A DNA stretch of 64,000 bases from IMGVR_UViG_3300010938_000951:124001-188000; one strand, 5' to 3'. Counted from the stretch's first letter, positions 11,904-56,583 are shown. Notes: generated from the sequence alone by a model not told the origin. Numbers and translations are program-made.

Positions 11904-11936
11904 TATGCTACGGGCTGATGTGTTATATTCATTATT

Positions 11937-12407
11937 GTGAATAACGTAATCTTCATCGAATTTTACAATAAACAAAACTTTCCTCCAGGTAAATGGCTGA
12001 GCGAGCCAGATTTATGTTCTTGGGATTATTATTTACCATGTTTAGCGATCCGTGATATGAGCATGGGGGTTTGGAAAGGATTTGTTGCTATAGAAAAGGG
12101 CCATCCACTTTATGGCAAATCAATTGAAGATATGTTAAATCAACCAGTAATGAGAGATATATTTATTGCTGTTTATGGCGGATTATGTGGTGCTGGTCGT
12201 TTGCCTGTTAAGTATAAAGAATTTGCTAAAGATTATTGGTGGATCGGTATTGAAACTTCGCATGGTGGGGATTTAATGCCTTTATTAAAATTGGATAATA
12301 ACGATCCTGATATGGCTAAACTAATATCAACACAAACGTATAAAGATTTGCGTTTCATACGCAGAGAAACTAATAAACTGGCAAAGTTGATTGCGAAACT
12401 ACAATGA
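11937..12407 (+). CDS. Conserved phage hypothetical protein
   Basis: WLSEPD, WKGFVA, WWIGIETSH pattern; leaderless GTG start. Confidence 0.65.
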   Translation: MNNVIFIEFYNKQNFPPGKWLSEPDLCSWDYYLPCLAIRDMSMGVWKGFVAIEKGHPLYGKSIEDMLNQPVMRDIFIAVYGGLCGAGRLPVKYKEFAKDYWWIGIETSHGGDLMPLLKLDNNDPDMAKLISTQTYKDLRFIRRETNKLAKLIAKLQ

Positions 12408-12490
12408 CCATGACTGGTTTAATCATATTAGATATATTACTAACTATCGCGCTTTTTTGTAATTTGAATAAAGATACTTATCGGTGATTT

Positions 12491-12802
12491 ATGAAAAAAA
12501 TGCCTATGACTGGCGCTACCCCACGCTATCGACTAGAGGGCGTGAAGGGGGAGTTTTTTGATGTCTTTGCAAAAAGGGCAAATGCAATTAAAGCGGCCAT
12601 TAAAATGGCTACAGAATATCCAGGTACCACATTTTTAGTTGTTCGAACAACTTTACTCAAGAAAAAAGTTGTTTTCAAAATGAAGATAGAAATGGATTTT
12701 CAATTTTCTGATATTCAGGATGTTTATGGCGGCATGGTTGATGTTTATCAACACAAACTAGATAAGACAAAATACTGGAGAAAAGCAGATGTTTCTACTT
12801 GA
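12491..12802 (+). CDS. Hypothetical protein
   Basis: ORF track. Confidence 0.65.
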   Translation: MKKMPMTGATPRYRLEGVKGEFFDVFAKRANAIKAAIKMATEYPGTTFLVVRTTLLKKKVVFKMKIEMDFQFSDIQDVYGGMVDVYQHKLDKTKYWRKADVST

Positions 12803-13280
12803 AATTGCATTAGTGGGCGGCATCTTAGCTGTTCTTGTTTTTATTCATTTTTTCGTAGATTGGATTTTTCAATCTCACGCTGAAGCAATGGTAAAACATA
12901 ATACTCCGAGAATCCGTGCCAAACATTGTATTATCTATACACTTGGTTTTGTGCCCATTATGTTATTGTTTAGATTTAATTTGATTGAGTTTTTCTTTGG
13001 GTTAAATCTTTTATTCTGGTCTCATTTTGTAGAAGATACTTATCTTCCGGTATACTTATGGGCAAAATATATTCGTAAGCCGCCTGAGATGACCGAGCCC
13101 CGTAAAGTAGTTGGGGCTGATGGTTATGTATCTGTGCTTCCGCCGGATCCTAAAGCTGGCTTTGTAGAATTTGTACAAACACCAATGGGTAAGATTCTAA
13201 TGATCGCTATTGATCAAATTATCCACATTGCATTCCTAATTCCAATTGCTTGGATTATGATGACCCATCTTGGAGATTGA
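12789..13280 (+). CDS. DUF3307-family membrane protein
   Basis: HFFVDWIFQS, HCIIY, SHFVED, DQIIH; TM segments. Confidence 0.75.
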   Translation: MFLLEIALVGGILAVLVFIHFFVDWIFQSHAEAMVKHNTPRIRAKHCIIYTLGFVPIMLLFRFNLIEFFFGLNLLFWSHFVEDTYLPVYLWAKYIRKPPEMTEPRKVVGADGYVSVLPPDPKAGFVEFVQTPMGKILMIAIDQIIHIAFLIPIAWIMMTHLGD

Positions 13281-13285
13281 TTCTA

Positions 13286-13693
13286 ATGAGTAGCATGACT
13301 TGGGCAGAGTTCGGTAAACTTATTACTGACCAACTAACAGACGATTTACTTCGCCCTAAGTACCGGAAGATCAAAAAAGCCGTTGCTGTTCCCAATACTT
13401 TTGGACACTGCTATGTAGCCAGCGAAGCAGCTTATTATTTATTGGGTGGGAAAGAGTCTGGCTGGAAGCCAATGCACATGAAGCAGTTAGGAGCTTCTCA
13501 TTGGTTTTTGAAACATGAATCTGGTTTTATTCTGGATTTAACTCGTTCCCAATTTAAATCACCCATTGACTATAGTAAAGCTAGAGGTGCTGCCTTTCTA
13601 ACTAAGCAGCCAAGTAAACGGGCCAAGAAGCTATTAATTCGCATCAAAGATTCTCGTGCCCTTGACAACCTTATTTGTAAGAATATACTGTAA
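13286..13693 (+). CDS. Hypothetical protein with putative papain/transglutaminase-like Cys-His-Asp triad
   Basis: GHCYVASEA, HWFL, DLT. Confidence 0.55.
   Translation: MSSMTWAEFGKLITDQLTDDLLRPKYRKIKKAVAVPNTFGHCYVASEAAYYLLGGKESGWKPMHMKQLGASHWFLKHESGFILDLTRSQFKSPIDYSKARGAAFLTKQPSKRAKKLLIRIKDSRALDNLICKNIL
13662..13689 (+). promoter_or_regulatory. sigma70-type promoter for rIIA/rIIB
   Basis: TTGACA-N16-TATACT. Confidence 0.75.
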
Positions 13694-13744
13694 GGCGAGG
13701 CGCTCGGAGAGGGCGCAGGACCAAACCAGAGAGGTATTAGAATA

Positions 13745-15838
13745 ATGAAACTGTCCGAAGCTAAGCCATATTTCGAATCTTCAGGAGAGATGCAAGAGCA
13801 TTTCTTCTCGATCCAAGACCAGGGTATGTTGTTCGACATCTTGCGTAGTAAGATGTATTCGAATCCGATTCTGGCAATTTGTCGTGAAATTACCAGTAAT
13901 GCACGTGATGCTCATCGTGAAATTGGTATGGCCGATAAACCAATTCATATCCATTTACCGTTTGGTTTGGAGCCTCACTATAAGATTAAAGATTTTGGGC
14001 CTGGCATCAGCCCGGATCGTATGTTGAACATCTTTATCAAATACACAGCCTCAACTAAACGTGAAGATAATATCCAAACTGGTGGTTTTGGTCTTGGGGC
14101 TAAGACTCCGTTCTCTTATAGTGATACATTTCAGGTTACTACCGTTCATAATAAAGTTCGGTACAGCTATGCCTGTGTTATTGATGATACTAAGGTTGGC
14201 AAGTTAGTATTGCTTGATGAGCGAGTGACTGATGAACCAAACAGTACGGAAATTTCTATCCCAGTAAAAACAGCCGATTATAACTTTTTCCGTCAGTATA
14301 CAGAACAAGCTTGTCGCCATTGGGATGTCAAACCAATTATTACTGGTGGCAATATTGATTGGCAGAAAATCAATAAGATTGCGGAAGGTCCTGGTTGGGC
14401 CATTGCTGCAACTAATGACTATAATCGTCATGCCAAGTTGGTCATTGATGGAATTGAGTACCCTCTTCCCCTTGAAGACCTACGTAAATATGCTGATACT
14501 AAACTCATCGATGCATCTCGTGGTGACTTTATTATGTACTTTGGTGTTGGTGAGTTGAGTCTTTCTGCAACCCGAGAAAATATCTTCTTGGATAAACCAA
14601 CGCAAGCTAAGATTCGTGAGCGCATGGATCAGATCGTTGCAGAAGTCAGAAAAACTGTATCCGCTAAAATTGATTCCTTCCCTAATCTATGGGATGCTAA
14701 CGTTTATTATCGCAAAGAGCTAACATCCGTGTTCAGCAACTTGCATTTCTTGGGTAAGTTGTTCTGGAAGAATCATGAACTTCACAATGGGCATATGGAA
14801 GTCAAGTGTGGGTTGTTTGAGTTCACTAAAGGCAAATATTCTCGTCGTCATGGTAATGATCCCAATAAGCTGACCCGTTCCGGTCATGCAGTTGGGCCTC
14901 GCACGATTTATTTTGAAGAAGGTCAGGAACTTTGGCTCAATGATCTTCCTATCAAGGAACCAACTCCCCGACATGTCAAGAAGGCATTTGAGGATAATCC
15001 TAATCTCAAACGTATCTTAGTTATTTGTCCCACGGATAAATATACTGAAGCGGACTTGAACAAGGATTTCCATTTAGATGAGATGAAGCCTAAGAGGCTA
15101 TCTTCTATCACCAAAGCTTCTGGTCGCGCTTATACGCCTCCAGCCTCTAGGTTGCTTGTTTTTAAATTTGACCTGACCTCTAGCGCTTTCCGACAGGTGA
15201 GTTATGATAACATGGAGGAAGACACAAACAACAAGGTTTTGTGCCTCCTTACTCGTGATCAATCTTATGGCCGCCTAGCCTCACTCAATAATAAACAAAA
15301 TTTGAGCGTATCAGCTTTTAAGTCTCTTATTGAACGAAATCCGAAAATTTCTTTCTATGGAGTTGACAAAGAAACTGACCCCAAGCGTCTAGAAGAAGAA
15401 TTCAGTGATTTCGAGACCTTAGATGACTTTATTGATAAAAAAGTTTTCAATAACAAGTCAATTAATTATGTCGAGATTAAGTTCGCACAACAACATACTT
15501 ATCGTGTGGACGAGCGAATGTTGAAGCATTATGATGCTTTGGCCCCGCTCATCACCGACAAAAACAGTACATTCCTTGCTCGTCTAGAGCTACACAAGGT
15601 TATTAAAAAACTTAGTGGGAATGACCGAAGTTTGTTGGAAATCTACGAATCAGCCAAAGGCGAGATTAAAAACTCTACTTTGACACAGTTCGTTAAAGAT
15701 AATCCTAGTTGGGACATTGATGGTATTAATCGAGCCTACGAAAAGAAATATCCGCTGTTGACTGCAATCAACACGTATAACATGCATCAAATGATTGAGC
15801 ATGTGGCTCATTATGTAAATATGGTCGATAAGATTTAA
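13745..15838 (+). CDS. rIIA: T4 rIIA-like protein (GHKL/Hsp90-like ATPase domain)
   Basis: REITSNARDAH, KDFGPGISP, GGFGLGAKTPFSY; adjacent to rIIB. Confidence 0.85.
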   Translation: MKLSEAKPYFESSGEMQEHFFSIQDQGMLFDILRSKMYSNPILAICREITSNARDAHREIGMADKPIHIHLPFGLEPHYKIKDFGPGISPDRMLNIFIKYTASTKREDNIQTGGFGLGAKTPFSYSDTFQVTTVHNKVRYSYACVIDDTKVGKLVLLDERVTDEPNSTEISIPVKTADYNFFRQYTEQACRHWDVKPIITGGNIDWQKINKIAEGPGWAIAATNDYNRHAKLVIDGIEYPLPLEDLRKYADTKLIDASRGDFIMYFGVGELSLSATRENIFLDKPTQAKIRERMDQIVAEVRKTVSAKIDSFPNLWDANVYYRKELTSVFSNLHFLGKLFWKNHELHNGHMEVKCGLFEFTKGKYSRRHGNDPNKLTRSGHAVGPRTIYFEEGQELWLNDLPIKEPTPRHVKKAFEDNPNLKRILVICPTDKYTEADLNKDFHLDEMKPKRLSSITKASGRAYTPPASRLLVFKFDLTSSAFRQVSYDNMEEDTNNKVLCLLTRDQSYGRLASLNNKQNLSVSAFKSLIERNPKISFYGVDKETDPKRLEEEFSDFETLDDFIDKKVFNNKSINYVEIKFAQQHTYRVDERMLKHYDALAPLITDKNSTFLARLELHKVIKKLSGNDRSLLEIYESAKGEIKNSTLTQFVKDNPSWDIDGINRAYEKKYPLLTAINTYNMHQMIEHVAHYVNMVDKI

Positions 15839-15851
15839 TAGGAGATAGAAA

Positions 15852-16790
15852 ATGTCAAAGAGAGTTAATTGGGCAATTACCGATAATAATGTTTCGGTGA
15901 ATTATGATGGCGAGTCTCATATTGTACCTCGCCAAGATGCATTAGCCGATCGTTTGATTAAGGCAATCAAAGAGAATCGACTACAAGAGATCCCCGCTCT
16001 TGTTTCGGCGGCTAAGCGCATTGAGATTTTTTCCAAGGGCAACTTCAAGGTAGAGAATGGTCAAGTTTTGGTTAATGGTGTGGCTGCGCCTCATGCATTG
16101 AGCAATAAGATCATCCGCTTCTCGAATGATGGTCTTCCGTTCCAACCTTTGGTTAAGTTTGCTGAAAACTTGCAGAAGAACCCATCATTCCGTGCTGTAA
16201 ATGAGCTGTTTACCTTCTTAGAGAAGAATGACCACCCAATCACGGAAAATGGCAACTTCATTGCGTATAAACGTGTTCGTTCTACTTTCAAGGATATTCA
16301 CAGCAATACCATGGATAATTCCGTTGGTAAAACTGTAGAGATTCCTCGTAACCAAGTGGATGAAGACTCCAACCGTACCTGTAGCCATGGTCTACACGTT
16401 GCTAACTGGGACTATGCTCATTTGCATTTTGCTAGTTCTGATGCAGCAACTGACGTCATGTTAGAGGTCGAAGTCAATCCGGCCGATGTAGTTGCAATTC
16501 CGGTTGACTACAACAATTCAAAAATGCGTGTTTGCAAGTACAAGGTTTTGGGTGTGGTAACTACTCCATATGAACCAAGCCGGGCCCTTCGAGTTGTTGA
16601 TGAGTCGTACAACCCTTCTGAAGAGTTTGATGAGCTATCAGAGGAAGAAGAGGAGTCATGCGAATATTGTGGAGAAGAGGTATATGATGGTGGGCGCCTC
16701 TGTACCGAATGTGATTACGATGAGGAGCATGACGAAGAGGATGATGAGGAAGACGATCGTTATCCTTACGAAGACGAAATCGAGGAATAA
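15852..16790 (+). CDS. rIIB: T4 rIIB-like protein with acidic Zn-ribbon tail
   Basis: NPSFRAVNELFTFL, PITENGNFIAYKRV, CSHGLHV, VVAIPVDYN, RVCKYKV. Confidence 0.9.
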   Translation: MSKRVNWAITDNNVSVNYDGESHIVPRQDALADRLIKAIKENRLQEIPALVSAAKRIEIFSKGNFKVENGQVLVNGVAAPHALSNKIIRFSNDGLPFQPLVKFAENLQKNPSFRAVNELFTFLEKNDHPITENGNFIAYKRVRSTFKDIHSNTMDNSVGKTVEIPRNQVDEDSNRTCSHGLHVANWDYAHLHFASSDAATDVMLEVEVNPADVVAIPVDYNNSKMRVCKYKVLGVVTTPYEPSRALRVVDESYNPSEEFDELSEEEEESCEYCGEEVYDGGRLCTECDYDEEHDEEDDEEDDRYPYEDEIEE

Positions 16791-17932
16791 TGCCAAATAT
16801 TGCAGTCCTAGGTGCTATGTGGGGAGACGAGGGTAAAGGGCATATTACCCATCGTCTCTCTCGTGATTATGATTGGGTCATTCGCTTCAACGGTGGCGCT
16901 AATGCCGGCCACACTATTTATCGAGATGGAAAGAAGTTTGTTCACAATTTACTTCCATCAGTAGATTTTAGAGTTCCACACGTCAAAGCCTATCTGGGAT
17001 CAGGTATGGTGATTGATCTAGCGAAACTCAGAGATGAAGTAGTTGAGGCAGATAAATCATATCCTGGGGTTGGCAGTCGTATTTTCGTTGATCATGACGC
17101 TTTCATTGTTGAAGCAAAGCACAAAGAGGAAGATAAATTAGCTAATAGCCATATAGGATCCACTAATAGAGGAATTGGACCAGCCTACAAAGATAAAATT
17201 TCTCGTGCTGGAAAACGAATAGGCGATTTAATTTTCGGCGATGATAATCAATTAGTAAATGAGTATTATGCCATTGTTAATGAGCTAATGTGTTTGGGCG
17301 TAAATTTCACAACTGTTTTACAGTTAGAGGGTCACTTTAAATCAAGCAATCTTTTATTTGAAGGTGCCCAGGGCGTTCTTTTAGATATTAATCACGGCAT
17401 CTATCCTTATGTTAGTTGTAGTGATGCAACAATTGGAGGTATTATTGCTTCTGGTTTTGCTTTTGCCAAATTAGATAAAGTGTATGGTGTAGCCAAATGC
17501 TATACAACCAAAGTTGGGGAAGGCCCATTTCCTACTGAAATTCATGGTGTAGCAGCCGATGATTTAAGGAAGATGGGTAATGAGTTTGGTGCCACCACAG
17601 GGCGTCCAAGACGTGTTGGGTGGTTAGATTTGCCAGCTTTACAATATGCTTGTAAAAAGGGCGGAATTACCCATCTCATCTTAACCAAATTTGATATTCT
17701 GAATGGTTTAGCTAAAGTTCCAATTTGTTTGCATTATGAATATGCTCCAACGCGCTCGTTTGACTTTTTTACAGCCCGCCCACAAATTTCTATGGTGGAT
17801 GGCTGGAATGATGCTAAACAGCCAGTTCAGCTTGAGAAATTTATCAAGTTGATTGAATCGGTTGTACAGGTCCCCGTAGAATATATTTCTTGTGGAACTG
17901 AAGAGTCCGACATCATGGACTGGGCAGCCTGA
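16790..17932 (+). CDS. purA: Adenylosuccinate synthetase
   Basis: WGDEGKG, GGANAGHT, GIGPAYKDK, FEGAQG, TTGRPRR. Confidence 0.95.
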   Translation: MPNIAVLGAMWGDEGKGHITHRLSRDYDWVIRFNGGANAGHTIYRDGKKFVHNLLPSVDFRVPHVKAYLGSGMVIDLAKLRDEVVEADKSYPGVGSRIFVDHDAFIVEAKHKEEDKLANSHIGSTNRGIGPAYKDKISRAGKRIGDLIFGDDNQLVNEYYAIVNELMCLGVNFTTVLQLEGHFKSSNLLFEGAQGVLLDINHGIYPYVSCSDATIGGIIASGFAFAKLDKVYGVAKCYTTKVGEGPFPTEIHGVAADDLRKMGNEFGATTGRPRRVGWLDLPALQYACKKGGITHLILTKFDILNGLAKVPICLHYEYAPTRSFDFFTARPQISMVDGWNDAKQPVQLEKFIKLIESVVQVPVEYISCGTEESDIMDWAA

Positions 17933-17944
17933 TATAGATCAGTT

Positions 17945-18973
17945 ATGCTTGCACTAGATAAGGTTGATCCACAATTTAGACTAATAGCTGATAGATTGTT
18001 TTTCACAGACAATACGGATTTAGATTTATCAAATTTCAAAATTTTACTTGATGGTAATGAATTTCATTACGGTTATTTATGGGATCGCTTTTTACGCAGT
18101 TCAGAAATTTTTTGGGAAGAAAGTTTTTGGATTAATCGTTTAGATATACTTTTATCTCTACAGTCTAAAAGACTTGATTCAGAAGTAGGAAATTATTTAC
18201 TCTCTCGATTTCGAAGGATGATCGACTTGCGCATCAATCCTACTCCTAAGGTTGATACTGAGTTTATTCAATTTATGGCATGGGTTAAAGTTAGAGTAGC
18301 CCGAAAAGAGGAAGTTCTTTCTATTCGCGATTTCTTTACCAACTTAGTATATACGATTAAAGTTGGCAAATTAACTAACATCATAAACCATTTCATTCCA
18401 TATCTTTTTCAAGATATGAATGAATATCTTGGGGTCTTGGGTAAAAGAGCAGCCGAATCAGCTCGTAGTTTTGAAGTGTTAAAACAATTAGAAAGTCAAG
18501 GCGTTGTAATTGACAAGTCTCCACTATTCAAGCTATCAAAAAATTTACTTCTAAAAAGAGCATTAAATAGACCCAATAGGCGCTCACTTTTTGCCCTGAT
18601 GGATGATAAAGATATTATGAATTATCTCAAATCAGAGTACAAGTTAGACGATCGTAATCGCTTAATCTCGTTTATAAATGCCTGTGACTTTAAAGAAATT
18701 GAAGAATATCATTTACGCAACGTAAAAAATCTATTAGAAATAGATGTGTCAATAGCGGATGAACTATTTACGGCCTACGCAAATAAACTTTGGACTCGTG
18801 GCGTAGGTAATCGTGGCGCCAATGTCAAACGTCTAATTAGACTTTGTAAAACATTTCCTGTCTTTTCTCCAAAGAAAGCTTTAGTCTATCTTTCTACTAC
18901 TGGTAAAATGTCTGATATTAAACCATTAATTCAAGCTTTTCCTGAGTTAAAAACTTTGGCGCCTTTTATATGA
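17945..18973 (+). CDS. Hypothetical alpha-helical protein
   Basis: 342-aa ORF; leaderless start. Confidence 0.75.
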   Translation: MLALDKVDPQFRLIADRLFFTDNTDLDLSNFKILLDGNEFHYGYLWDRFLRSSEIFWEESFWINRLDILLSLQSKRLDSEVGNYLLSRFRRMIDLRINPTPKVDTEFIQFMAWVKVRVARKEEVLSIRDFFTNLVYTIKVGKLTNIINHFIPYLFQDMNEYLGVLGKRAAESARSFEVLKQLESQGVVIDKSPLFKLSKNLLLKRALNRPNRRSLFALMDDKDIMNYLKSEYKLDDRNRLISFINACDFKEIEEYHLRNVKNLLEIDVSIADELFTAYANKLWTRGVGNRGANVKRLIRLCKTFPVFSPKKALVYLSTTGKMSDIKPLIQAFPELKTLAPFI

Positions 18974-19164
18974 TTTGGAATCAATTACCCTATGAGTTAC
19001 AACAAAAAGTCATTGATCGTATTGTAACTTTACTTGAAAATGAAGAAGATGATCTTATGCAAGATGGTCTTATTGCCGCTATTCATGAATTAGAAGTATG
19101 GAGCAATACTCCATGTGAAATAATTGGAGAATATGGTTTTCCAGAAAAGGATCCTTTCAAATGA
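18970..19164 (+). CDS. Hypothetical protein
   Basis: ATGA-coupled ORF. Confidence 0.65.
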   Translation: MIWNQLPYELQQKVIDRIVTLLENEEDDLMQDGLIAAIHELEVWSNTPCEIIGEYGFPEKDPFK

Positions 19165-19496
19165 TTTCAGTAACTGAAAAGGCTGCTTTAAAAATAAAAG
19201 AGATTTCAGATAGTGAAGGTATTGGCCACTATAATGTTCGTGTGCGAGTTGTGGGTGGTGGTTGTGCCGGATTTACATATGATATGTACTATGAAGAGAA
19301 AATTAGCGAGATGGATGAAGTCATCGAGGTTACCGACTATTACGGCACTATCAAGGTCGTAGTTGACCCGCTTTCGCTACAGTATCTTGAAGATACCACA
19401 GTGGATTGGCAGGATGGCGCCTTTGGTGCTGGTTTCAAGTTTATCAATCCAAAGGTTACAGGATCTTGTGGTTGTGGTAGTTCTGTTTCATTTTGA
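19161..19496 (+). CDS. Fe-S cluster A-type carrier (IscA/ErpA/HesB family)
   Basis: GGGCAGFTY, VDPLSLQYL, NPKVTGSCGCGSS. Confidence 0.93.
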   Translation: MISVTEKAALKIKEISDSEGIGHYNVRVRVVGGGCAGFTYDMYYEEKISEMDEVIEVTDYYGTIKVVVDPLSLQYLEDTTVDWQDGAFGAGFKFINPKVTGSCGCGSSVSF

Positions 19497-19504
19497 GGTA
19501 AATT

Positions 19505-19933
19505 ATGGTTGTTGTAGTTCCGCAGATGCGCCACGAGCAAAAGCCCTGTGATGGTTCTTTTATTCGTATCCCGTCTGAAAAACTAAAGACGATGGCTCTT
19601 CAAACTCTTGAGAACATCAAGAAATACAAGGCCAAGGATCGTAAGAGGTTAGCTGACCGGGAACGCAAAGAACTCCAAGAAAAACGAGAGAAGCGTCGCA
19701 ATAGCATCTGGTCCAAAATTTTTGGCTATAAGGAACAGCCTGAGCCAACTGATGAGGAACTTATAAAGATGCATGAGAACAGTGGTAGCCCAGGCTGTAT
19801 ATGGCTCCCGGAAACTTTCTGGATTGATTACCGTTACGAGAAAAATATAGAAGTGGCTCATCGTCTACTCAATGCAACAGAATATGCCGATGAAGTTGCA
19901 GTATCTACTAAGGACTTAGAAAGATTGATATGA
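19505..19933 (+). CDS. Hypothetical protein
   Basis: GAGG SD; ORF track. Confidence 0.7.
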   Translation: MVVVVPQMRHEQKPCDGSFIRIPSEKLKTMALQTLENIKKYKAKDRKRLADRERKELQEKREKRRNSIWSKIFGYKEQPEPTDEELIKMHENSGSPGCIWLPETFWIDYRYEKNIEVAHRLLNATEYADEVAVSTKDLERLI

Positions 19934-20247
19934 ATAATTCATGGACATTGGTAGAGGCTATTGCTTTTGCTAATTCACTACATGAATATATCTATCCATT
20001 AGGATTTGATGTTGCTATAACTGGTAGTATTCTAACTAAAGGTTATAGTGAAAAGGATTTAGATTTGGTGATATATCCTTTAAAAAAGATATCATCTAAC
20101 TATACGAATTTGATTAGTAAGCTTCCAAATTTCGGATTAAAATTTATCCGTCTGCCCAATCATAATCTTGGTTATCAAGACGATGGTAAAAATGTTCAAG
20201 TTTGGGAGCATAATAACAAACGTGTAGATTTATTTTTCTTGAGTTAG
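19930..20247 (+). CDS. Minimal nucleotidyltransferase-like protein (TAG stop; readthrough would end at TGA 20253)
   Basis: GSILTKGYSEKDLDLVI fits the Pol-beta GS..DxD signature, with distal D in RVDLFF. Confidence 0.65.
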   Translation: MNNSWTLVEAIAFANSLHEYIYPLGFDVAITGSILTKGYSEKDLDLVIYPLKKISSNYTNLISKLPNFGLKFIRLPNHNLGYQDDGKNVQVWEHNNKRVDLFFLS

Positions 20248-20249
20248 TT

Positions 20250-21362: not shown

Positions 21363-21381
21363 TTTCGTATCTAAGTACAGT

Positions 21382-21729: not shown

Positions 21730-21736
21730 TGAAGGA

Positions 21737-21967
21737 ATGAACATGATTCATGGAATCTATTTGAGAAGCAAACCAAAAAACAAGTGGCTTTTGGTCTCTC
21801 AGACTATTTCGCCGGAAATGGCACATATGGAGGTTGAAGCTTTTAAAAAGCAAGCGGCTGAAGATGGTTTAGACCAAGCTGAGGTAGCAATTCAAACTTT
21901 TGATTCTGCATTTTTTATTCCAGAGACTTTGGTTGAATTAAAAGAACGGAAAATTCTATATAACTAA
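21737..21967 (+). CDS. Hypothetical protein
   Basis: AAGGA SD; ORF track. Confidence 0.65.
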   Translation: MNMIHGIYLRSKPKNKWLLVSQTISPEMAHMEVEAFKKQAAEDGLDQAEVAIQTFDSAFFIPETLVELKERKILYN

Positions 21968-21969
21968 TT

Positions 21970-22902
21970 ATGAGCCAATTAAATAAGTTTGAAGCTCTAC
22001 TCTATGAGTTTGAAGAGCCGTCAGTATCTAAAAGGCAAATAGATAAGCTTATTTCTCTTCTAAACAAGAGTCATGTGTATAGTACAATATTTGACAGTTA
22101 TGTATCTCGGAGATTACAGGCAAATATTCATCCTGAACGCCTATTGAATATGGCTTATAATTTAGAAAAGAATGATAATACAAAGTATCTTAGTGAATCC
22201 ATTAATGTGGCAGTTGCTAATAGTATTATTTTAAAAGATGAAAATTATGATCAGTTCTATTTTATGAACCGGCATGATATTCGTGTTGAGAACCATATTT
22301 TCAAAACAGTGATTGAGAAAATTGGAGATTGTCTTGATAAGTCATCAATAGATATTATTACAAAGATTGCTTTTAATATTCGAATGGATAAACATCTATT
22401 ATTGTTAAAAGCGCTTGGAACGGTTGAATTTAGTAGTTTTCGAACTGCTTTGTTTATGGACCGGCTGGAGATTCAAGATCAGTATATGTTGGCGGTAAGG
22501 GCTTTTGAGGATAATAATGAGATTGCCCCCAAATTATTAAAGTTCTCAAATAAAAACTTATACAATCATATGTCTGGTTTAGTATCTAAAAATGGCGATA
22601 AAGATCAATTTATTACTGCCTTAAGAAATTCCGTTATTGAGATTGAGAAAATTGAATATAATGATTTTATATATTTCCTTCTCACAACAAATGCAGATCA
22701 CATTCCATCTACATTAGGAAGATTATATGTGCGGGCAGAACAGGAAGGTAGATTCAGCTATCTGTTAACAGTATGTGCACATAAAAATAAGAAAGATGTA
22801 TTAAGAACTCTTTGTCAAACGAAAGACAAAGAGTTAATTGATAAATTTTTCTCGATCTATAAAGATCATCCAGATGTGAAACATCTAGTTCCTTTCTTGT
22901 GA
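21970..22902 (+). CDS. Hypothetical alpha-helical protein
   Basis: 310-aa ORF; leaderless start. Confidence 0.75.
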   Translation: MSQLNKFEALLYEFEEPSVSKRQIDKLISLLNKSHVYSTIFDSYVSRRLQANIHPERLLNMAYNLEKNDNTKYLSESINVAVANSIILKDENYDQFYFMNRHDIRVENHIFKTVIEKIGDCLDKSSIDIITKIAFNIRMDKHLLLLKALGTVEFSSFRTALFMDRLEIQDQYMLAVRAFEDNNEIAPKLLKFSNKNLYNHMSGLVSKNGDKDQFITALRNSVIEIEKIEYNDFIYFLLTTNADHIPSTLGRLYVRAEQEGRFSYLLTVCAHKNKKDVLRTLCQTKDKELIDKFFSIYKDHPDVKHLVPFL

Positions 22903-22941
22903 GGTATCTGTTATATAGTCATGTGATATCTCAAAGGAAAC

Positions 22942-24048: not shown

Positions 24049-24058
24049 TGGCGCGCCC

Positions 24059-31710: not shown

Positions 31711-31749
31711 AAAGGGCCGGTTGATTAAGTTCAACCGGCCCTTTGTTTT
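31711..31749 (+). terminator. Strong intrinsic terminator
   Basis: 14-bp stem AAAGGGCCGGTTGA/TCAACCGGCCCTTT followed by T tract. Confidence 0.85.
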
Positions 31750-31777
31750 GCGCTATTAATTACGATATATACTATGT

Positions 31778-32494
31778 ATGAACAAATACATGTATGAGAG
31801 TGATTATAGTGCAGATTCTCTCAGATGGCTAACTAAGGTCACGGAACTTAATATATTACCTCATGAATATCAAAGATTGGAAGAACTTCAGAACGAAATA
31901 ATAAAAAACAAAGATTCGGCAATGGCTTGCTTCTTTGCTACTGAGTTTGGAAAGTTCAATCCTCATAAAATGCAAAAGGTAATCTTAGACAAACGAGATC
32001 CGAAATACGCTTTTACTTTTGCGCAATACATTCCAAATGCAGATATTAAAGCACTACAAAATGTGGTAATACAATCTAAAAGTACCAAGTACATAACTAA
32101 ATTTGCATGCTTTATTAAACAGTCAGATAGAAAAATACTTGAAAGTCTGATTTTAGAATCTAAAAGTGTGAAATATGCTCACATGTATCTTAAACATGTA
32201 AAAAGTGCAGACATTAAAAAATTCAAACATATTATTCTAGAATCTGGTAAACCAAGATATTTATTTGAATTGGCTAAACATCTTACCTCAGATGCTGATA
32301 TTGAGATGGTTGAGGATTTAATAATTAAATCGCAGTCCTTCACTTATATGAGATTGTTTGCTGAAAAGATTAAAAAAGCCAATGTAGATAAAATAGAACA
32401 AGCAGTATTAGCGACTGATAATGGCCCCGAAATCAAAAAATTTGCTAAGTATGTTCGACGATCTAAAATGAAACAATTCTTATTGGTAATGTAA
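31778..32494 (+). CDS. Alpha-helical repeat protein
   Basis: About 30-aa repeats (ii.s..pkY.y.FA..i..adi..l). Confidence 0.7.
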   Translation: MNKYMYESDYSADSLRWLTKVTELNILPHEYQRLEELQNEIIKNKDSAMACFFATEFGKFNPHKMQKVILDKRDPKYAFTFAQYIPNADIKALQNVVIQSKSTKYITKFACFIKQSDRKILESLILESKSVKYAHMYLKHVKSADIKKFKHIILESGKPRYLFELAKHLTSDADIEMVEDLIIKSQSFTYMRLFAEKIKKANVDKIEQAVLATDNGPEIKKFAKYVRRSKMKQFLLVM

Positions 32495-32495: not shown

Positions 32496-33188
32496 ATGGA
32501 CTCTCCTAAATACAACAGAACATTTCATTTGCCCTGGAGTCCTGGCGCAACCGATGACGACAAGATAGCTACGTCTATTGATCATTTATTAAACACACCA
32601 ATTATAATTACTGAAAAGATGGATGGAAGCAATACCTCACTGGAGTTTAATGGATGTTTTGCCAGAACACATGCCGGACCTCCAGCTCATGCATCCTTTG
32701 ATGGACTAAAAGCTTTACATGCATCGCTCAAATACAAAATCCCTGAGGGAGTTCAATTGTTTGGAGAATGGTGTTTTGCGCGCCATTCTATTGAGTATAA
32801 TGAGCTACCAGGATATTTTATGCTATTTAATGTTAGAGATATGAACACTAGGGTTCCGCCAATGTGGACATCATGGGAAGAAGTCGAAATGTGGGCAGAA
32901 GAAATTGGTGTACCAACTGTTCCGGTTTTATATAAAGGTTCTGTTTCTTCTGAAAATGAATTAAAGGAATTAGTGGAATCTTTTATGAATCAGCCGTCAT
33001 CTTGTGGTGGTATAAGAGAGGGCGTGGTGGCTCGTATGGCGTTAGAATTTCCAGATGAAAGCTTTTCCTTATGCGTAATGAAATGCGTGCGTGCGAATCA
33101 TGTACAAACTTCAGAACATTGGAAAGATCAGGAAATCATTAGGAATAAAATTAAACCTAATTTGGCGCTTGACTCCTCGGTGCGCTAG
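32496..33188 (+). CDS. RNA ligase family protein (Rnl2-like)
   Basis: KYNRTFHLPWS, TEKMDGSN, FGEW, REGVV, MKCVRANHVQT; TAG stop. Confidence 0.85.
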   Translation: MDSPKYNRTFHLPWSPGATDDDKIATSIDHLLNTPIIITEKMDGSNTSLEFNGCFARTHAGPPAHASFDGLKALHASLKYKIPEGVQLFGEWCFARHSIEYNELPGYFMLFNVRDMNTRVPPMWTSWEEVEMWAEEIGVPTVPVLYKGSVSSENELKELVESFMNQPSSCGGIREGVVARMALEFPDESFSLCVMKCVRANHVQTSEHWKDQEIIRNKIKPNLALDSSVR

Positions 33189-33197
33189 CCTTATATT
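33169..33197 (+). promoter_or_regulatory. sigma70-type promoter
   Basis: TTGACT-N17-TATATT. Confidence 0.6.
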
Positions 33198-35335: not shown

Positions 35336-35350
35336 GATATATTAAGTAGC

Positions 35351-35512
35351 ATGAAGTTACTTAAATGTAAAATTTGTATGGGCGAAGCTGATTTTATTAA
35401 CAATGACCGATCTGTCAATCGCAAAATGAAATGTCGCAAGTGCGGATTCACTAATGAGGTTGAAAACAAGGGTCCAGAAATTGTTGTAATTAGAAAGCGC
35501 CCGATTCAATAA
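35351..35512 (+). CDS. Small Zn-ribbon protein (53 aa, not in the ORF track)
   Basis: MKLLKCKICMG...KCRKCGF; leaderless TATATT promoter 7 nt upstream. Confidence 0.65.
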   Translation: MKLLKCKICMGEADFINNDRSVNRKMKCRKCGFTNEVENKGPEIVVIRKRPIQ

Positions 35513-37444: not shown

Positions 37445-38637
37445 AACTTCCTATATAACGATAACGTTCTTGGTAAAGGATAACTATCTACCCTTTTTAC
37501 TAACTCACAGCCGTGGTCGATAAAAAGGCGCTCATATGTTGGCATATCATCAATATCTTCTATTAAGATGTATTCGTTAGAAATACTTAACAAAGTCTTA
37601 ACAAAATCAGAAGGGCTAATTACATCTTTAATATGATGTACAATAGCTAATGCCAACACCAAATCTGATTTGTATCTGTCGGTCTCAAACCACTTATTAT
37701 CACGAATGGATTCTATAGTTTTTACAGCAAATATTGCTGGTAATTTAAACTGCCGATTAAATCCATAAGCCATATCTATACATGCTGAAACTAAATCAAA
37801 ACCTATAACAGATTTTGCTTTTTTAGCTGACAAAAAACTATAGTATCCTTTATTGCACGCTACATCTGTTACAGTTTCATAATCCAATTCTTGTAGTATA
37901 TTAGCTATATTAATGCCTTTAACTTGTAGTGATTCTGGATGATCAATGTCCATTGTATTAGAATAATTTTCTGACCAATGAGATTTATCTAAAGTAACTG
38001 GTATGTCACTTATAGCTTGGGCCAATTCTAACCAGGCTTCGGGTGTTGTATAGTCTTTCTCAATAAATGAGGTTAATATATCATTTGTATTTTTAATATC
38101 ATCAAGGCATAATTCATAGGCATTACATTGTGTAGATTTTAAAACCCACCTACGTACTAAATAACTAGTTAAAACAAAAGCAATAATAGAATTTTCTGGA
38201 GTATTCTCAAATATACCACCATAATCTAGCCATTTGAAACCATCAATTGTTTGAACTGCGTTAGATTCTTGTATATCTCTAGCTATTAAACCATGCTTAA
38301 CTAATTCAGAATTAAGTTTACAAATATTAGCAATGAATTCTTTGGCGTATGTTATTGGTAATTCTTGGATCCTGATATGATGTTTGTATATTGTGTGTTC
38401 ATACACCGGCATAATATCATCAGAGCCATCTATACCTGTAAAATCCAACATAAATTCTGTTGGTGTAGCCGTTTGTATGGCAGGTATATTTGATGATAAT
38501 ATTTTATTAAAAATGGTAAACATACTTAAGTTGTATGACCTTAATAATCTGCCCTGATACCAAAATAATGGACAACATAACTCAGAAGAAGCAATATGTC
38601 TAGATATATCGTTTAATGTCAAAACTTGTTTAGACAT
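37441..38637 (-). CDS. SAM-dependent methyltransferase domain protein
   Basis: C-terminal DVACNKGYYS, LALAIVHH. Confidence 0.7.
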   Translation of the reverse strand: MSKQVLTLNDISRHIASSELCCPLFWYQGRLLRSYNLSMFTIFNKILSSNIPAIQTATPTEFMLDFTGIDGSDDIMPVYEHTIYKHHIRIQELPITYAKEFIANICKLNSELVKHGLIARDIQESNAVQTIDGFKWLDYGGIFENTPENSIIAFVLTSYLVRRWVLKSTQCNAYELCLDDIKNTNDILTSFIEKDYTTPEAWLELAQAISDIPVTLDKSHWSENYSNTMDIDHPESLQVKGINIANILQELDYETVTDVACNKGYYSFLSAKKAKSVIGFDLVSACIDMAYGFNRQFKLPAIFAVKTIESIRDNKWFETDRYKSDLVLALAIVHHIKDVISPSDFVKTLLSISNEYILIEDIDDMPTYERLFIDHGCELVKRVDSYPLPRTLSLYRKL

Positions 38638-45779: not shown

Positions 45780-45810
45780 TCTTTCTACCTTAACTCTTAT
45801 TGGATTTTAT

Positions 45811-46557: not shown

Positions 46558-46624
46558 GATATCCTTCCATATAACTTGCTTGCTTTAAGATGCGTAATTT
46601 TCGGTATATAGAAAGAGAAGAGTT

Positions 46625-47086: not shown

Positions 47087-47507
47087 TGAGATAAAAGCAT
47101 ATCCTGCATTTTTACCTTTTGACCATCGATTTGGTAAATTTTCTGATGCTGCTTTTCACAAGGTTTGTGCTGAGACTGATCCTGATTTTCAAAGTGTAGA
47201 AGATATGTTTTTTGTCTACAAAAAAATTATGGATAGTCGTCCCCGAGATTTGAAATCAATAGAGGAAATTGAAGCTTGGGGTAAAGAGGCATTTCAGGAT
47301 TGGCCTCCTAAAAATGGAGTTGTTATTTATGAACAATGTTTTCCAGAGGATGGTTCCGAGCCAGAATGGTTTTGGGCAGATAAAGACATGTGGGAAGAGT
47401 TTGATGCAGCTATGGATAAAGCTGAAAAAGAGCGCCAAGAACGTATGGATGAGGCGCTCCGAGAAGAAAGAGAAGCTTGGCGTTATGCTAGAGACGATGA
47501 TTGGTAA
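47022..47507 (+). CDS. Hypothetical Zn-finger protein
   Basis: CQIC ... FHKVC. Confidence 0.65.
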   Translation: MALIIYGKTTCQICNKTLDKNDEIKAYPAFLPFDHRFGKFSDAAFHKVCAETDPDFQSVEDMFFVYKKIMDSRPRDLKSIEEIEAWGKEAFQDWPPKNGVVIYEQCFPEDGSEPEWFWADKDMWEEFDAAMDKAEKERQERMDEALREEREAWRYARDDDW

Positions 47508-47595
47508 ATATATTCTTTATGCGAATATGTGGGTTATCATATTAGCCCTACTATACATTTCGCATAGAATTAATGCTACCCCTAAAGATTCGTAA
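47497..47595 (+). CDS. Small membrane peptide (32 aa)
   Basis: MIGKYILYANMWVIILALLYISH... Confidence 0.35.
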   Translation: MIGKYILYANMWVIILALLYISHRINATPKDS

Positions 47596-54705: not shown

Positions 54706-54724
54706 AAGGAAACTATAAAACAGA

Positions 54725-55264
54725 ATGCAACCCAACAACCAGCAGCGTGAATATCGTACTCGTATCAATAAATATATTCGTGTTCCTCAAATCCGTGTCG
54801 TTCTAGCTGACGGCTCTAACGCAGGTATCATGAACACCTATGAAGCACTCAAAATGGCTCAAGATCAAGGTCTTGATTTGGTTGAAATTAGCCCCAAAGC
54901 ACAGCCTCCAGTCTGTAAAATTATGGACTATGGTAAATTTAAATATGAAGAGAAGAAAAAGCTTCAAGCTGCTAAAAAGAATCAACAGATTCAAGAACTT
55001 AAAGAACTAACATTCCGCCCAAATACGGATGAAAATGATTTGAAGCATAAAGTAACTCAAGCTAAAGAATTCTTGGCCGAGGGTGATAGAGTTAAATTTG
55101 CAGTACGTTTCCGTGGTCGTGAAATTGTGCACCAGGATATTGGTAAAGATAAGCTTAATTGGATTCTTCAGGAATTAAACGGTCTGGTTGCTCCTAACCC
55201 ACAGATTAGTCTTGAAGGTAAAATTATGTGGATGATCGTTTCTCCTACTAAACAAAAGTCATAA
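54725..55264 (+). CDS. infC: Translation initiation factor IF-3
   Basis: RINKYIRVPQIRVV, GLDLVEISPKAQPPVCKIMDYGKFKYE, VKFAVRFRGRE. Confidence 0.97.
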   Translation: MQPNNQQREYRTRINKYIRVPQIRVVLADGSNAGIMNTYEALKMAQDQGLDLVEISPKAQPPVCKIMDYGKFKYEEKKKLQAAKKNQQIQELKELTFRPNTDENDLKHKVTQAKEFLAEGDRVKFAVRFRGREIVHQDIGKDKLNWILQELNGLVAPNPQISLEGKIMWMIVSPTKQKS

Positions 55265-55272
55265 TAGGAGAT

Positions 55273-55348
55273 GTCCCCGTGGTCCAAGGGATGGGCACCG
55301 CACTCCTAAGGCGGCATTATGCTGGTTCGAGTCCAGCCGGGGATACCA
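55273..55348 (+). tRNA. tRNA-Arg(CCU)
   Basis: GTCCCCG/CGGGGAT, CCGCA-ctCCTaa-GGCGG, CCA. Confidence 0.88.
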
Positions 55349-55365
55349 CTGATATATAGGTTGCC

Positions 55366-55827
55366 ATGAAGCACGACATTTCGGCTACGGCAACAGCAAA
55401 TTTAAATGATCTAATCGGGTTGTTAAAACAGCGCTTACAAAGTTCTGGTAAAGCGAAAGCAACAGATACACACGGCAATATTACTTATATTGATACGGAT
55501 ATTTTCTCTAGAGAATCATTAGAGGCTTTTATTTACCTATCTCTTTCTGATTTTAATCAAGTTCCACAATTTACCTTTTTTACATTAGAAGATACTAAGT
55601 TTATCAAAATATTTACTGATATTTTAGTTGAAGGTGCTGTGGTTTATGCATTAGGATCTAAAGCGCTTGTTGAAAAGGGAAGAGAATTTCAAATTACTGA
55701 TGGTGGAATTACATTTGATCCGCCAACAGTATCTGATCTTTTAAACACTCAATATAGCGCCCTGCTACGATTTCATTGGGAAAAACTTAAAACCATCAAA
55801 TCTCGCATCAGTGAGTTTAAGCAATAA
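55366..55827 (+). CDS. Hypothetical protein (possibly virion neck/adaptor-like)
   Basis: Leaderless motif; the fold guess is weak. Confidence 0.6.
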   Translation: MKHDISATATANLNDLIGLLKQRLQSSGKAKATDTHGNITYIDTDIFSRESLEAFIYLSLSDFNQVPQFTFFTLEDTKFIKIFTDILVEGAVVYALGSKALVEKGREFQITDGGITFDPPTVSDLLNTQYSALLRFHWEKLKTIKSRISEFKQ

Positions 55828-55845
55828 GACGATATATATTCCAGT

Positions 55846-56583
55846 ATGAAGAATGGAATTATTCTCGCCGGTGGTACGGGGTCTAGGTTGATGCCTTTGA
55901 CGCAAGTTGTTAATAAACACTTGCTTGGGGTCAACGGAAAATTTATTATTGACTATCCAATGGATACCCTTAAAAAAATGGGTTGCCAGGACGTCACTGT
56001 TATTTTGGGCGGTAATCATTATGCCCAAGTCGCGGGTTATCTTGGAGATGGTAGCCGATATGGTTTAAATCTAAACTATGTTTATCAGGCCGAACCAAAA
56101 GGGATTGCTCACGCGATTAGTCTATGCAAAAGATTCGTCTATGATGATTCTGATTTTTCAGTAATATTGGGTGATAATATTTTTGAGAATGTTCCACGCT
56201 GGAATAATCCGGATTGGAAAACGAATCCACGCGCCCAAATTCTTCTCTCACACCATAGAGATTTGAAACGTTTTGGTGTTTGTTCCATTGATACAGATGG
56301 TAAAATTGCCAAGATTGAGGAAAAACCAAAAGAGATAGATCCTAACTATAAAAACTTAGCCATGTCTGGTTGTTATTGTTTTACTCCAAGATTTTTTGAT
56401 TATTTTGAACAGCTTACCCCAAGTGATAGGGGCGAATACGAAATTACTGATATTGTGCGCCACTATTTAAAAGACGATAACCTATCTTACTCCATCATTG
56501 ATGGTTTGTGGAGTGACGCAGGGACTCACGAATCTATTGCTTTTGTGAATAATTACTTCTATACTAAATCTCGGAATCATTGA
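55846..56583 (+). CDS. rfbA: Glucose-1-phosphate thymidylyltransferase-like
   Basis: LAGGTGSRL, QAEPKGIAHA, LGDN, EEKP, RGEYEITD, WSDAGT. Confidence 0.9.
   Translation: MKNGIILAGGTGSRLMPLTQVVNKHLLGVNGKFIIDYPMDTLKKMGCQDVTVILGGNHYAQVAGYLGDGSRYGLNLNYVYQAEPKGIAHAISLCKRFVYDDSDFSVILGDNIFENVPRWNNPDWKTNPRAQILLSHHRDLKRFGVCSIDTDGKIAKIEEKPKEIDPNYKNLAMSGCYCFTPRFFDYFEQLTPSDRGEYEITDIVRHYLKDDNLSYSIIDGLWSDAGTHESIAFVNNYFYTKSRNH

What the first reader, a model, noticed from the sequence alone, without database searches (positions are those of the whole stretch)
11924..55846. Recurrent -10-only TATAT(A/T) promoter at a fixed distance from start codons: a leaderless regulon
The hexamer occurs at 11924, 17933 (TATAGA), 21957, 31766, 35338, 48184, 51044, 53180, 55353 and 55833, often preceded by GA. 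It lies 6-7 nt before the starts at 11937, 17945, 21970, 31778, 35351, 48197, 51057, 53193, 55366 and 55846. These genes have no obvious SD, and most lack a canonical -35 at 16-17 nt. This suggests a phage-specific (T4 gp55-like) promoter class producing leaderless mRNAs. It is notable because the phage encodes IF3, which is known to modulate leaderless initiation.
Basis: partly seen in the sequence, partly recalled or inferred. Interest (0 to 1): 0.6.

Follow-up and report, generated by a model that had tools for sequence, protein, structure and literature searches.

The report
Minimal promoters abutting start codons
In this large uncultivated phage a conserved G-N-TATAT(A/T) promoter box sits 6-7 bases before the start codon of about a dozen genes that lack a ribosome-binding site, so these genes are most likely made as leaderless mRNAs; this is a known kind of arrangement, newly seen in a huge-phage lineage, and no RNA data exist to prove it.

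Summary
Placement at -13/-12 is enriched: 10 genes against 1.4 in dinucleotide shuffles, maximum 6 of 300. It is conserved upstream of orthologues in up to 19 related huge-phage contigs while the spacers diverge.

The real motif is an octamer, G-N-TATA(T/A)(A/T). It is almost wholly intergenic and co-oriented with the genes. It also lies 8-17 nt before 13 tRNA genes or clusters. In four places in the window it pairs with TTGAC(A/G/T) at 16-17 nt. It is therefore a -10 element of sigma-70-type promoters, mostly without a -35.

The start-adjacent subset, 14 sites in the 267-kb record and 10 in the window, has weak or no SD. All 14 have a pyrimidine at -1 before the purine start (p = 9e-6). Some follow a strong terminator or a tRNA. 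This fits leaderless transcription.

The T4 gp55 idea is not supported. No gp55 homologue or phage RNA polymerase was found, even in a complete 480-kb relative, which does encode a small sigma-70-family protein. IF3 is present, but its link to these genes is speculation. No start sites could be mapped because no RNA runs exist.

The parts
11924..11939 (+). TATATT, 7 nt, then GTG start (preceded by TGTGT). Candidate leaderless start of a 156-aa phrog_2164 protein.
   Evidence: The TGTGTTATATT-7 nt-GTG arrangement is conserved in three relatives.
11875..11903 (+). Conserved full promoter TTGACA-17-TATCTT just upstream of the 11924 site (tandem promoter).
17931..17947 (+). GA-TATAGA, 6 nt, then ATG 17945. 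The G belongs to the TGA stop of the PurZ-like gene.
   Evidence: TGATATAGA-6 nt-ATG is kept in two relatives (in G001 with a 6-codon extension).
21957..21972 (+). TATATA, 7 nt, then ATG 21970. Weakest site: no G at -14, TTGAAT at 18 nt.
   Evidence: Not conserved in the two relatives at 57% identity.
31711..31752 (+). Strong hairpin (14-bp stem, dG -26.9) with a T-tract: an intrinsic terminator 21 nt before the 31766 hexamer.
   Evidence: The hairpin is kept with changed sequence in relatives L040 and L043.
31764..31780 (+). GA-TATATA, 6 nt, then ATG 31778. Best-supported leaderless candidate.
   Evidence: All 19 relatives (58-82% aa identity) keep G[A/T]TATAT[A/T] 6-7 nt before the ATG, with unrelated sequence upstream.
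35336..35353 (+). GA-TATATT, 7 nt, then ATG 35351 (53-aa zinc-ribbon-like ORF).
48182..48199 (+). GT-TATATT, 7 nt, then ATG 48197 (Thg1-like tRNA-His guanylyltransferase).
   Evidence: GTTATATT or GGTATATT sits 6-8 nt before the ATG in 10 of 13 relatives; three have lost it.
51042..51071 (+). GA-TATATA, 7 nt, then ATG 51057, then an in-frame TAG at 51069-51071.
   Evidence: The motif, the ATG and the TAG are conserved, with codon-type substitutions on both sides of the TAG.
53178..53195 (+). GA-TATATA, 7 nt, then ATG 53193 (60-aa ORF). The G belongs to the upstream TGA stop.
   Evidence: Conserved in seven relatives with 6- or 7-nt spacers of varying sequence.
55351..55368 (+). GA-TATATA, 7 nt, then ATG 55366, beginning 3 nt after tRNA-Arg(CCU) 55273-55348.
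   Evidence: Conserved in L002, L008 and L010.
55831..55848 (+). GA-TATATA, 7 nt, then ATG 55846 (nucleotidyl transferase). The N-terminal MKNGIILAGG fixes the start.
   Evidence: TATAT lies at -13 in all nine relatives, whether a tRNA or a protein gene lies upstream.
37445..37459 (-). GT-TATATA, 7 nt, then ATG 37444 on the minus strand. Ambiguous, because the spacer holds AGGAAG.
823..830 (+). GT-TATATA 8 nt before tRNA-Leu 839 (tRNA promoter, CAATAA box upstream).
3206..3233 (+). TTGACA-16-TATATT promoter before the tRNA-His/Glu cluster.
3724..3731 (+). GA-TATAAT 10 nt before tRNA-Glu 3742.
8439..8466 (+). TTGACG-16-TATATT promoter with a 34-nt leader and SD before gene 8501.
33169..33197 (+). 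TTGACT-17-TATATT promoter with a 52-nt leader before gene 33250.
49014..49041 (+). TTGACA-16-(TG)T-TATATT promoter 13 nt before the tRNA-Thr cluster. The spacer holds a CAATAA box.
59308..59335 (+). Leadered use of the same box: TATATA, a 19-nt leader with AGGA, then ATG 59333.
   Evidence: Conserved in all relatives.
54725..55264 (+). Phage IF3 gene.

Best explanation
The hexamer is the core of an octamer, G-N-TATA(T/A)(A/T). This octamer is the -10 region of this phage lineage's promoters for a sigma-70-type RNA polymerase holoenzyme, most probably the host's.

A few copies have a consensus -35 box. Most have none, and these resemble extended -10 promoters, with the G at -14.

The same box drives three kinds of unit:
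- tRNA clusters, where it lies 8-17 nt before the mature 5' end;
- ordinary leadered mRNAs, with an SD downstream;
- about 14 genes in this 267-kb record (10 of them in the window), where it sits 6-7 nt before the start codon.

In the third group transcription should start on the A or G of the start codon. The resulting mRNA has no leader and no SD, and is presumably translated by 70S ribosomes binding the 5'-terminal AUG.

Shown here: the motif, its placement, its conservation, the lack of SD, the pyrimidine at -1, and its use before tRNAs and with -35 boxes. Inferred: the transcription start sites, which sigma factor reads the box, and leaderless translation.
For: 1. Placement. GATATATA occurs 16 times between genes and twice within them on the + strand, and once on the - strand. 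In relative G001 it is 20 on + and 3 on -.

2. Enrichment. TATAT[AT] lies at -13/-12 of 10 genes, against 1.4 in shuffles.

3. Conservation. The box is kept at a fixed distance while the spacers and upstream sequence diverge: 19 of 19 relatives for gene 31778, 10 of 13 for 48197, 9 of 9 for 55846, and also for 53193, 55366, 51057, 17945 and 11937.

4. Transcriptional role. The octamer lies 8-17 nt before 13 tRNA genes or clusters here and 15 in G001. tRNA genes need no translation signal.

5. Sigma-70 type. The hexamer is paired with TTGAC(A/G/T) at 16-17 nt four times in the window: 3206, 8439, 33169 and 49014.

6. Start-site rule. All 14 start-adjacent sites have a pyrimidine at -1 before a purine start. 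Background is 44% pyrimidine; p = 9e-6. This matches the RNA polymerase preference for pyrimidine at -1 and purine at +1.

7. No SD at these sites.

8. Uncoupling from upstream. A strong terminator ends 21 nt before the 31766 hexamer, and another precedes the site at G000:222682. Two more sites directly follow tRNAs. These genes cannot rely on upstream transcription or translational coupling.

9. Start codons are fixed by conservation and domain boundaries: the NTP_transferase match begins at residue 4 and the Thg1 match at residue 8.

10. The principle is established. A TA-like box about 12 nt before the start marks leaderless genes in bacteria (PMC3160421, PMC12340547). Phages are known to switch host polymerase to extended -10 promoters (PMC4124052).
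Against: - No transcription start site was mapped. No RNA run holds this phage, and it is uncultivated.
- The last base of the hexamer is A in most -35-less copies. Sigma-70 strongly prefers T at -7, so a modified or phage-directed holoenzyme cannot be excluded.
- Only about half the sites have T at -15.
- Several sites lie directly after an upstream ORF with no terminator, so read-through transcripts carrying these starts internally must also exist.
- A few copies are followed at once by purine-rich SD-like stretches (37457; G000:199624 and 36902), which does not fit a start 7 nt downstream.
- 21957 is not conserved.
- The host is unknown, so its capacity for leaderless translation is unknown.
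- Phage IF3 would, by the E. coli precedent, inhibit such mRNAs (PMC9031893).
Confidence: 0.65

Rival explanations
1. The box is a promoter and the mRNAs are leaderless, but a phage-directed holoenzyme reads it. That could be a phage sigma factor or a host sigma remodelled by a phage protein. This would make it a true phage-specific temporal class, close to the reader's idea but without gp55.
For: - A at the last hexamer position is the majority in -35-less copies, unlike sigma-70 promoters.
- Relatives G001 and G002 encode a 209-aa sigma-70-family protein with regions 2 and 4.
- GATATAT sites are about 5 times denser in the first 240 kb of G001 than in the half holding the tail-sheath and virion genes, which suggests a temporal class.
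- Phage factors that favour extended -10 promoters are known (PMC4124052).
Against: - There is no gp55 homologue.
- The phage sigma has a region 4, which implies a -35 box, and these sites have none.
- The same hexamer works with consensus TTGACA.
- The sigma gene is absent from this 62%-complete record, so nothing links it to these sites.
Confidence: 0.15
2. The start-adjacent copies act in the RNA, not the DNA. An AU-rich element at the SD position recruits ribosomes (for example through protein S1) to internal cistrons of polycistronic mRNAs, so the genes are SD-less but not leaderless.
For: - The hexamer occupies the SD position.
- Several sites directly follow an upstream stop codon with no terminator.
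- Read-through transcripts must exist.
Against: - The same octamer precedes tRNA genes and pairs with -35 boxes.
- The G two bases upstream and the pyrimidine at -1 are promoter and start-site features, not known ribosome-binding features.
- Some sites follow strong terminators or tRNAs.
- Most genes in the phage use a normal SD.
Confidence: 0.1
3. The octamer marks an RNA-processing site. An endonuclease would cut long precursors there, releasing pre-tRNAs and short-leader mRNAs.
For: It lies before both tRNAs and mRNAs in densely packed, co-oriented units. AU-rich single-stranded sites are typical RNase E targets (general knowledge).
Against: - Its pairing with TTGACA at promoter spacing, and its match to the extended -10 geometry, are unexplained by processing.
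- Cleavage would leave SD-less leaders of 8-13 nt, which are poor substrates for either initiation mode.
Confidence: 0.05
4. Chance occurrence of an AT-rich hexamer in AT-rich intergenic DNA.
For: GC content is 38-39%. Only about 3% of genes are involved. 21957 is not conserved.
Against: The shuffle test, the 51-fold intergenic enrichment of the octamer, the strand bias, and conservation across up to 19 relatives with diverged flanks.
Confidence: 0.02

Closest known systems
Bacterial 'TA-led' leaderless genes: a -10 box adjacent to the ORF (Actinobacteria, Deinococcus-Thermus; PMC3160421, PMC12340547; modelled in GeneMarkS-2, PMC6028130)
   Same: A -10-like TA box begins about 12-13 nt before the start codon. 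There is no SD, and the start codon is ATG or GTG.
   Different: Here it is in a phage. It covers only about 3% of genes, while the rest use a strong SD. The box is TATAT(A/T) with a G at -14 rather than TANNNT. Start sites are unmapped.
Extended -10 (TGn) promoters used by phages after remodelling host RNA polymerase (Thermus phage P23-45 late promoter with gp39; T4 middle promoters with AsiA; PMC4124052)
   Same: Both are -35-independent promoters defined by a -10 hexamer plus an upstream G. Both coexist with -10/-35 promoters in the same genome.
   Different: No gp39 or AsiA counterpart was identified. T at -15 is present in only about half the sites. The last hexamer base is mostly A. No temporal data exist.
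T4 late promoters (TATAAATA read by gp55 with gp33 and gp45)
   Same: Both are AT-rich, -35-less 8-bp elements spanning about -13 to -6.
   Different: There is no gp55 homologue in this record or in a complete relative. The consensus differs. The hexamer also works with TTGACA. T4 late mRNAs are leadered.
Classical leaderless phage mRNAs (lambda cI from PRM; cited in PMC9031893)
   Same: A phage gene whose transcript starts at the AUG.
   Different: Those are single regulatory genes. Here a dozen accessory genes share one conserved minimal promoter.

Membership tests
Leaderless (TA-led) genes | A -10-like TA box beginning about 12 nt upstream of the translation start | tested here: met
   The hexamer begins at -13 or -12 at 14 sites. 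The position is enriched over shuffles and conserved.
Leaderless (TA-led) genes | No Shine-Dalgarno sequence | tested here: met
   Median anti-SD duplex energy is -0.75 against -4.2 kcal/mol, p = 2.6e-4.
Leaderless (TA-led) genes | The transcription start coincides with (or lies within a few nt of) the start codon | not testable with these tools
   No RNA runs hold the sequence. The only indirect support is pyrimidine at -1 and purine at +1 in 14 of 14 sites.
Leaderless (TA-led) genes | The start codon is the true N-terminus | tested here: met
   Pfam domains begin at residues 4 and 8. Codon-type conservation begins at the ATG in relatives.
Extended -10 sigma-70 promoters | TG at -15/-14, one base upstream of the hexamer | tested here: inconclusive
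   G at -14 is present in 13 of 14 start-adjacent sites. T at -15 is present in about 52% of 71 intergenic sites.
Extended -10 sigma-70 promoters | No -35 box is needed | tested here: met
   The -35 scores of the start-adjacent and most tRNA sites match random positions.
Extended -10 sigma-70 promoters | A TATAAT-like hexamer with A at -11 and T at -7 | tested here: inconclusive
   A at -11 is always present. The last base is T in the copies that have a -35 box (TATATT) but A in most -35-less copies.
T4-type late promoters (gp55) | A gp55-family sigma factor is encoded | tested here: not met
   phrog_234 finds nothing at E <= 1 in G000, G001 (complete), G002 or G003.
T4-type late promoters (gp55) | TATAAATA consensus | tested here: not met
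   The consensus is G-N-TATAT(A/T), with no conservation at the two following bases.
T4-type late promoters (gp55) | Dependence on the gp33 co-activator and the gp45 sliding clamp | not tested
   These were not searched. The question is biochemical.
Phage-RNA-polymerase promoters (jumbo-phage multisubunit or T7-like) | A phage-encoded RNA polymerase | tested here: not met
   PF00562 and PF00623 find nothing in four records while the controls rang. PF00940 also finds nothing, but its control did not ring, so that result is uninformative. Very divergent polymerases could be missed.

The most novel reading that the evidence does not exclude
The huge-phage lineage runs a two-tier translation programme. 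A set of accessory genes is expressed as leaderless mRNAs from minimal G-N-TATATA promoters. The phage's own IF3, encoded among them, shifts ribosomes between leaderless and SD-led messages as infection proceeds. At least one of these genes (51057) is additionally gated by a conserved amber codon at codon 5, read by the phage's tRNA(CUA).
Probability: 0.1. Interest if true: 0.75.

Novelty: new member of a known kind. Interest (0 to 1): 0.4.

Why it matters
If start-site mapping confirms it, this would show that a clade of 250-480-kb uncultivated phages uses conserved minimal promoters that deliver leaderless mRNAs for some accessory genes. This happens beside a normal SD-based programme.

It has a practical use. 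It fixes start codons and transcription units that gene callers tuned to SD will miss.

It gives a defined promoter consensus for a lineage with no cultured member.

It also offers a concrete test of what phage-encoded IF3 does, since IF3 dosage is known to affect leaderless translation.

Tried and rejected
- RNA evidence.
- Near-identical phage records: none found. By protein, only distant rIIA relatives were found.
- gp55 profile: no hit.
- RNA polymerase beta and beta' families: no hits, with working controls.
- T7-type polymerase family: no hit, but the control did not ring, so this is uninformative.
- Generic sigma-70 consensus scan. The total number of matches is no higher than in shuffles, so only individual full-consensus sites were used.
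- Fixed-position upstream element. The position matrix shows no information upstream of the G. A variably spaced CAATAA box is enriched about 5-fold, but mainly at tRNA promoters.
- Genome-wide TAG recoding. There is no excess of coding continuation after TAG, so no alternative code was named or used. All translations are table 11.
- A phage initiator tRNA that might favour leaderless translation. The tRNA-Met(CAU) at G000:76074 has a paired 1-72 end and lacks the three G-C pairs of the anticodon stem, so it is not an initiator.
- Identity of the two tRNA(CUA) genes by similarity to other phage tRNAs: unresolved.
- A copy of the relatives' sigma gene in this record: none by tblastn.


Full report
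**Source**

The window is bases 124,001-188,000 of a 266,899-bp IMG/VR virus record (GC 39%, CheckV completeness 62%). It has no near relative among deposited phages. It carries rIIA, a tyrosyl-tRNA synthetase, an RNA ligase, a PurZ-like enzyme, 65 tRNA genes and an IF3 gene. About 90% of its roughly 390 predicted genes are on the + strand. Most genes use a canonical SD, AAGGAG or GAGGT centred at -11 to -6.

**Check of the observation**

The gap is 7 nt at eight sites and 6 nt at two. There are three deviations:
- 17933 reads TATAGA.
- The start at 11937 is GTG.
- The ATG at 51057 runs into a TAG at codon 5.

Using starts defined without reference to the motif (first ATG of each coding-potential ORF), TATAT[AT] begins at -13 or -12 of 10 genes. 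Dinucleotide-preserving shuffles give a mean of 1.4 and a maximum of 6 in 300. Other upstream positions carry about 1.07 per position. Other AT-rich hexamers show no comparable peak. Ten of the 14 such sites in the record lie in this window.

**The motif is larger than the hexamer**

Apart from tRNA-derived words, the most intergenic-enriched octamer on the + strand is GATATATA. It occurs 16 times between genes and twice within them, a 51-fold enrichment, and only once on the - strand. This holds whether or not that G belongs to an upstream stop codon. T precedes the G in about half of 71 intergenic copies. The geometry T-G-N-hexamer is that of an extended -10 promoter.

**Conservation**

Protein-anchored searches of IMG/VR found relatives on contigs of 130-480 kb.

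| Gene | What is conserved |
|---|---|
| 55846 | All nine relatives (78-95% aa identity) keep TATAT at -13. Spacers vary, and the upstream neighbour is a tRNA in some and a protein gene in others. |
| 31778 | All 19 relatives (58-82% aa identity) keep G[A/T]TATAT[A/T] 6-7 nt before the ATG, with unrelated sequence further upstream. |
| 48197 | Ten of 13 relatives keep GTTATATT or GGTATATT at 6-8 nt. Three closely related contigs have replaced both the upstream region and the first residues. |
| 53193, 55366, 51057, 17945, 11937 | The box is likewise kept. |
| 21970 | Not kept in its two relatives at 57% identity. It is the weakest member. |

The complete relative G001 (480,838 bp) shows the same -12 to -14 peak and the same strand bias.

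**Is the signal transcriptional or translational?**

Two results decide this.
1. The octamer lies 8-17 nt before the mature 5' end of 13 tRNA genes or clusters in this record and 15 in G001. tRNA genes need no ribosome signal.
2. In the window the hexamer TATATT is paired four times with TTGAC(A/G/T) at 16-17 nt:
   - 3206-3233, before tRNA-His
   - 8439-8466, before gene 8501, with a 34-nt leader and SD
   - 33169-33197, before gene 33250
   - 49014-49041, before the tRNA-Thr cluster

A perfect TTGACA at the right spacing is expected at about 0.1% of random positions. The hexamer is therefore the -10 element of sigma-70-type promoters. Most copies lack any -35 and rely on the G at -14. A leadered, conserved use is also seen at 59308, with a 19-nt leader containing AGGA.

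**Evidence that the start-adjacent copies give leaderless mRNAs**

- With the hexamer at -13/-12, the start codon's first base is the 7th or 8th base after the hexamer. That is the usual initiation distance.
- All 14 sites have a pyrimidine at -1 followed by the purine of ATG or GTG, against 44% pyrimidine at -1 for other genes (p = 9e-6). This is the known initiation preference of RNA polymerase. It was not used to pick the sites, and it also holds in the varied spacers of the relatives.
- The SD is absent or weak.
- A 14-bp hairpin with a T-tract (dG -26.9) ends 21 nt before the hexamer at 31766. A similar one precedes the site at G000:222682 and its G001 orthologue. The sites at 55353 and G000:48481 begin 3 nt after a tRNA. 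These genes cannot depend on upstream translation. They have only about 30 nt in which to place a promoter.
- The start codons are secure. The nucleotidyl-transferase and Thg1 domains begin at residues 4 and 8, and codon-type substitutions begin at the ATG in relatives.

The inference follows the established rule that a TA box about 12 nt before the start marks leaderless genes (PMC3160421, PMC12340547).

**Which polymerase?**

- The gp55 profile, taken from T4 gene 55, finds nothing in this record or in G001 (complete), G002 or G003.
- RNA polymerase beta and beta' families find nothing, with working controls.
- The T7-type family found nothing, but its control failed, so that result is uninformative.
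- G001 and G002 encode a 209-aa sigma-70-family protein with regions 2 and 4. It lies in the part of the genome missing from this record.

A region-4-bearing sigma implies a -35 box, which these sites lack. I therefore favour the host primary sigma, perhaps remodelled by a phage factor as in P23-45 or T4 (PMC4124052). One fact leaves room for that rival: the last hexamer base is mostly A in the -35-less copies but T in the copies that have a -35 box. In G001 the GATATAT copies are about 5 times denser in the first 240 kb than in the half that holds the tail sheath, a virion protein and the sigma gene. This hints at an early or middle class.

**IF3**

The gene is real (window 54725-55264) and sits among four start-adjacent sites. 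In E. coli, raised IF3 inhibits leaderless translation and low IF3 can help it (PMC9031893). The direction of any effect here is therefore open. Nothing in the sequence tests it.

**Limits**

- No RNA run holds this phage, so start sites are inferred.
- The gene models are my own simple caller.
- Several sites directly follow an ORF with no terminator, so read-through transcripts carrying these starts internally surely exist.
- A few copies are followed immediately by SD-like purine runs (37457; G000:199624 and 36902), and these fit less well.

**Verdict**

The promoter and leaderless reading is well supported indirectly. The gp55-like claim is not supported. 'Regulon' and the IF3 link are unproven. 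It is a new member of a known kind.

Noticed in passing
window 51057-51095; tRNAs at 52544-52617 and 52628-52700: The gene starting at 51057 has an in-frame TAG at codon 5 (51069-51071). The TAG is conserved in five relatives. Both sides show codon-type substitutions: Ser AGC/AGT, Tyr TAT/TAC, Leu CTA/TTA/TTG and Ile ATC/ATT, plus one in-frame codon deletion. There is no alternative start between the TAG and the next ATG. Two tRNA(CUA) genes lie 1.5 kb downstream. TAG ends only 15 of 390 predicted genes. This looks like gene-specific amber read-through. A genome-wide test gave no sign of general TAG recoding.
   Followed up: partly
window 810-822, 3712-3722, 49024-49030; many sites in G000 and G001: A CAATAA or CATAA box lies 2-5 nt upstream of the G of the octamer in about 35% of intergenic copies, against 7% of controls, and in about 60% of tRNA promoters. 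In the full promoters it sits in the -35/-10 spacer. Its function is unknown.
   Followed up: partly
window about 59283-59301: A G-rich near-palindrome (GGGGGATCTATAGGGGGAG) lies directly upstream of the TATATA at 59308. It is conserved in all nine relatives despite flanking divergence, and may be an operator or regulator site.
   Followed up: no
window 16790-17932: A PurZ-type adenylosuccinate-synthetase homologue (phrog_1211, E = 1.4e-83). It hints at a modified base (2-aminoadenine) pathway. Its TGA stop supplies the G of the 17933 box.
   Followed up: no
relatives L059, L060, L071 (orthologues of window 48197): Three closely related contigs (91% aa identity) have lost the GTTATATT box. They carry a different upstream region and altered first residues. 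This is a natural case of the start-adjacent promoter being swapped out.
   Followed up: no
L013:1327-1956 (G001:343306-343935): A 209-aa sigma-70-family protein (regions 2 and 4; phrog_351) in the complete relative and in G002. Its own upstream region has CAATAA-4 nt-GTATACTA. It is absent from this incomplete record.
   Followed up: partly
window 49300-49377; G000:41327 and 43345: ARAGORN calls tRNA-like genes with unreadable or 4-base anticodons inside tRNA clusters.
   Followed up: no
window 50547-51653: The 51057/51090 protein matches only positions 90-268 of the 270-position phrog_14850 profile. The peptidase-like ORF 50547-51038 lies in the same frame, separated from it by two TAA codons and the promoter box. 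This may be a split or rearranged gene.
   Followed up: no
window 46558-46624: The divergent intergenic region between the minus-strand cluster and gene 46625 holds a single palindromic TATATA (46605-46610). It could serve both directions. Only the + strand reading has the upstream G.
   Followed up: no
window 54180-54209: A perfect 12-of-12 sigma-70 consensus (TTGACA-18-TATAAT) lies inside or next to ORFs upstream of the IF3 gene.
   Followed up: no
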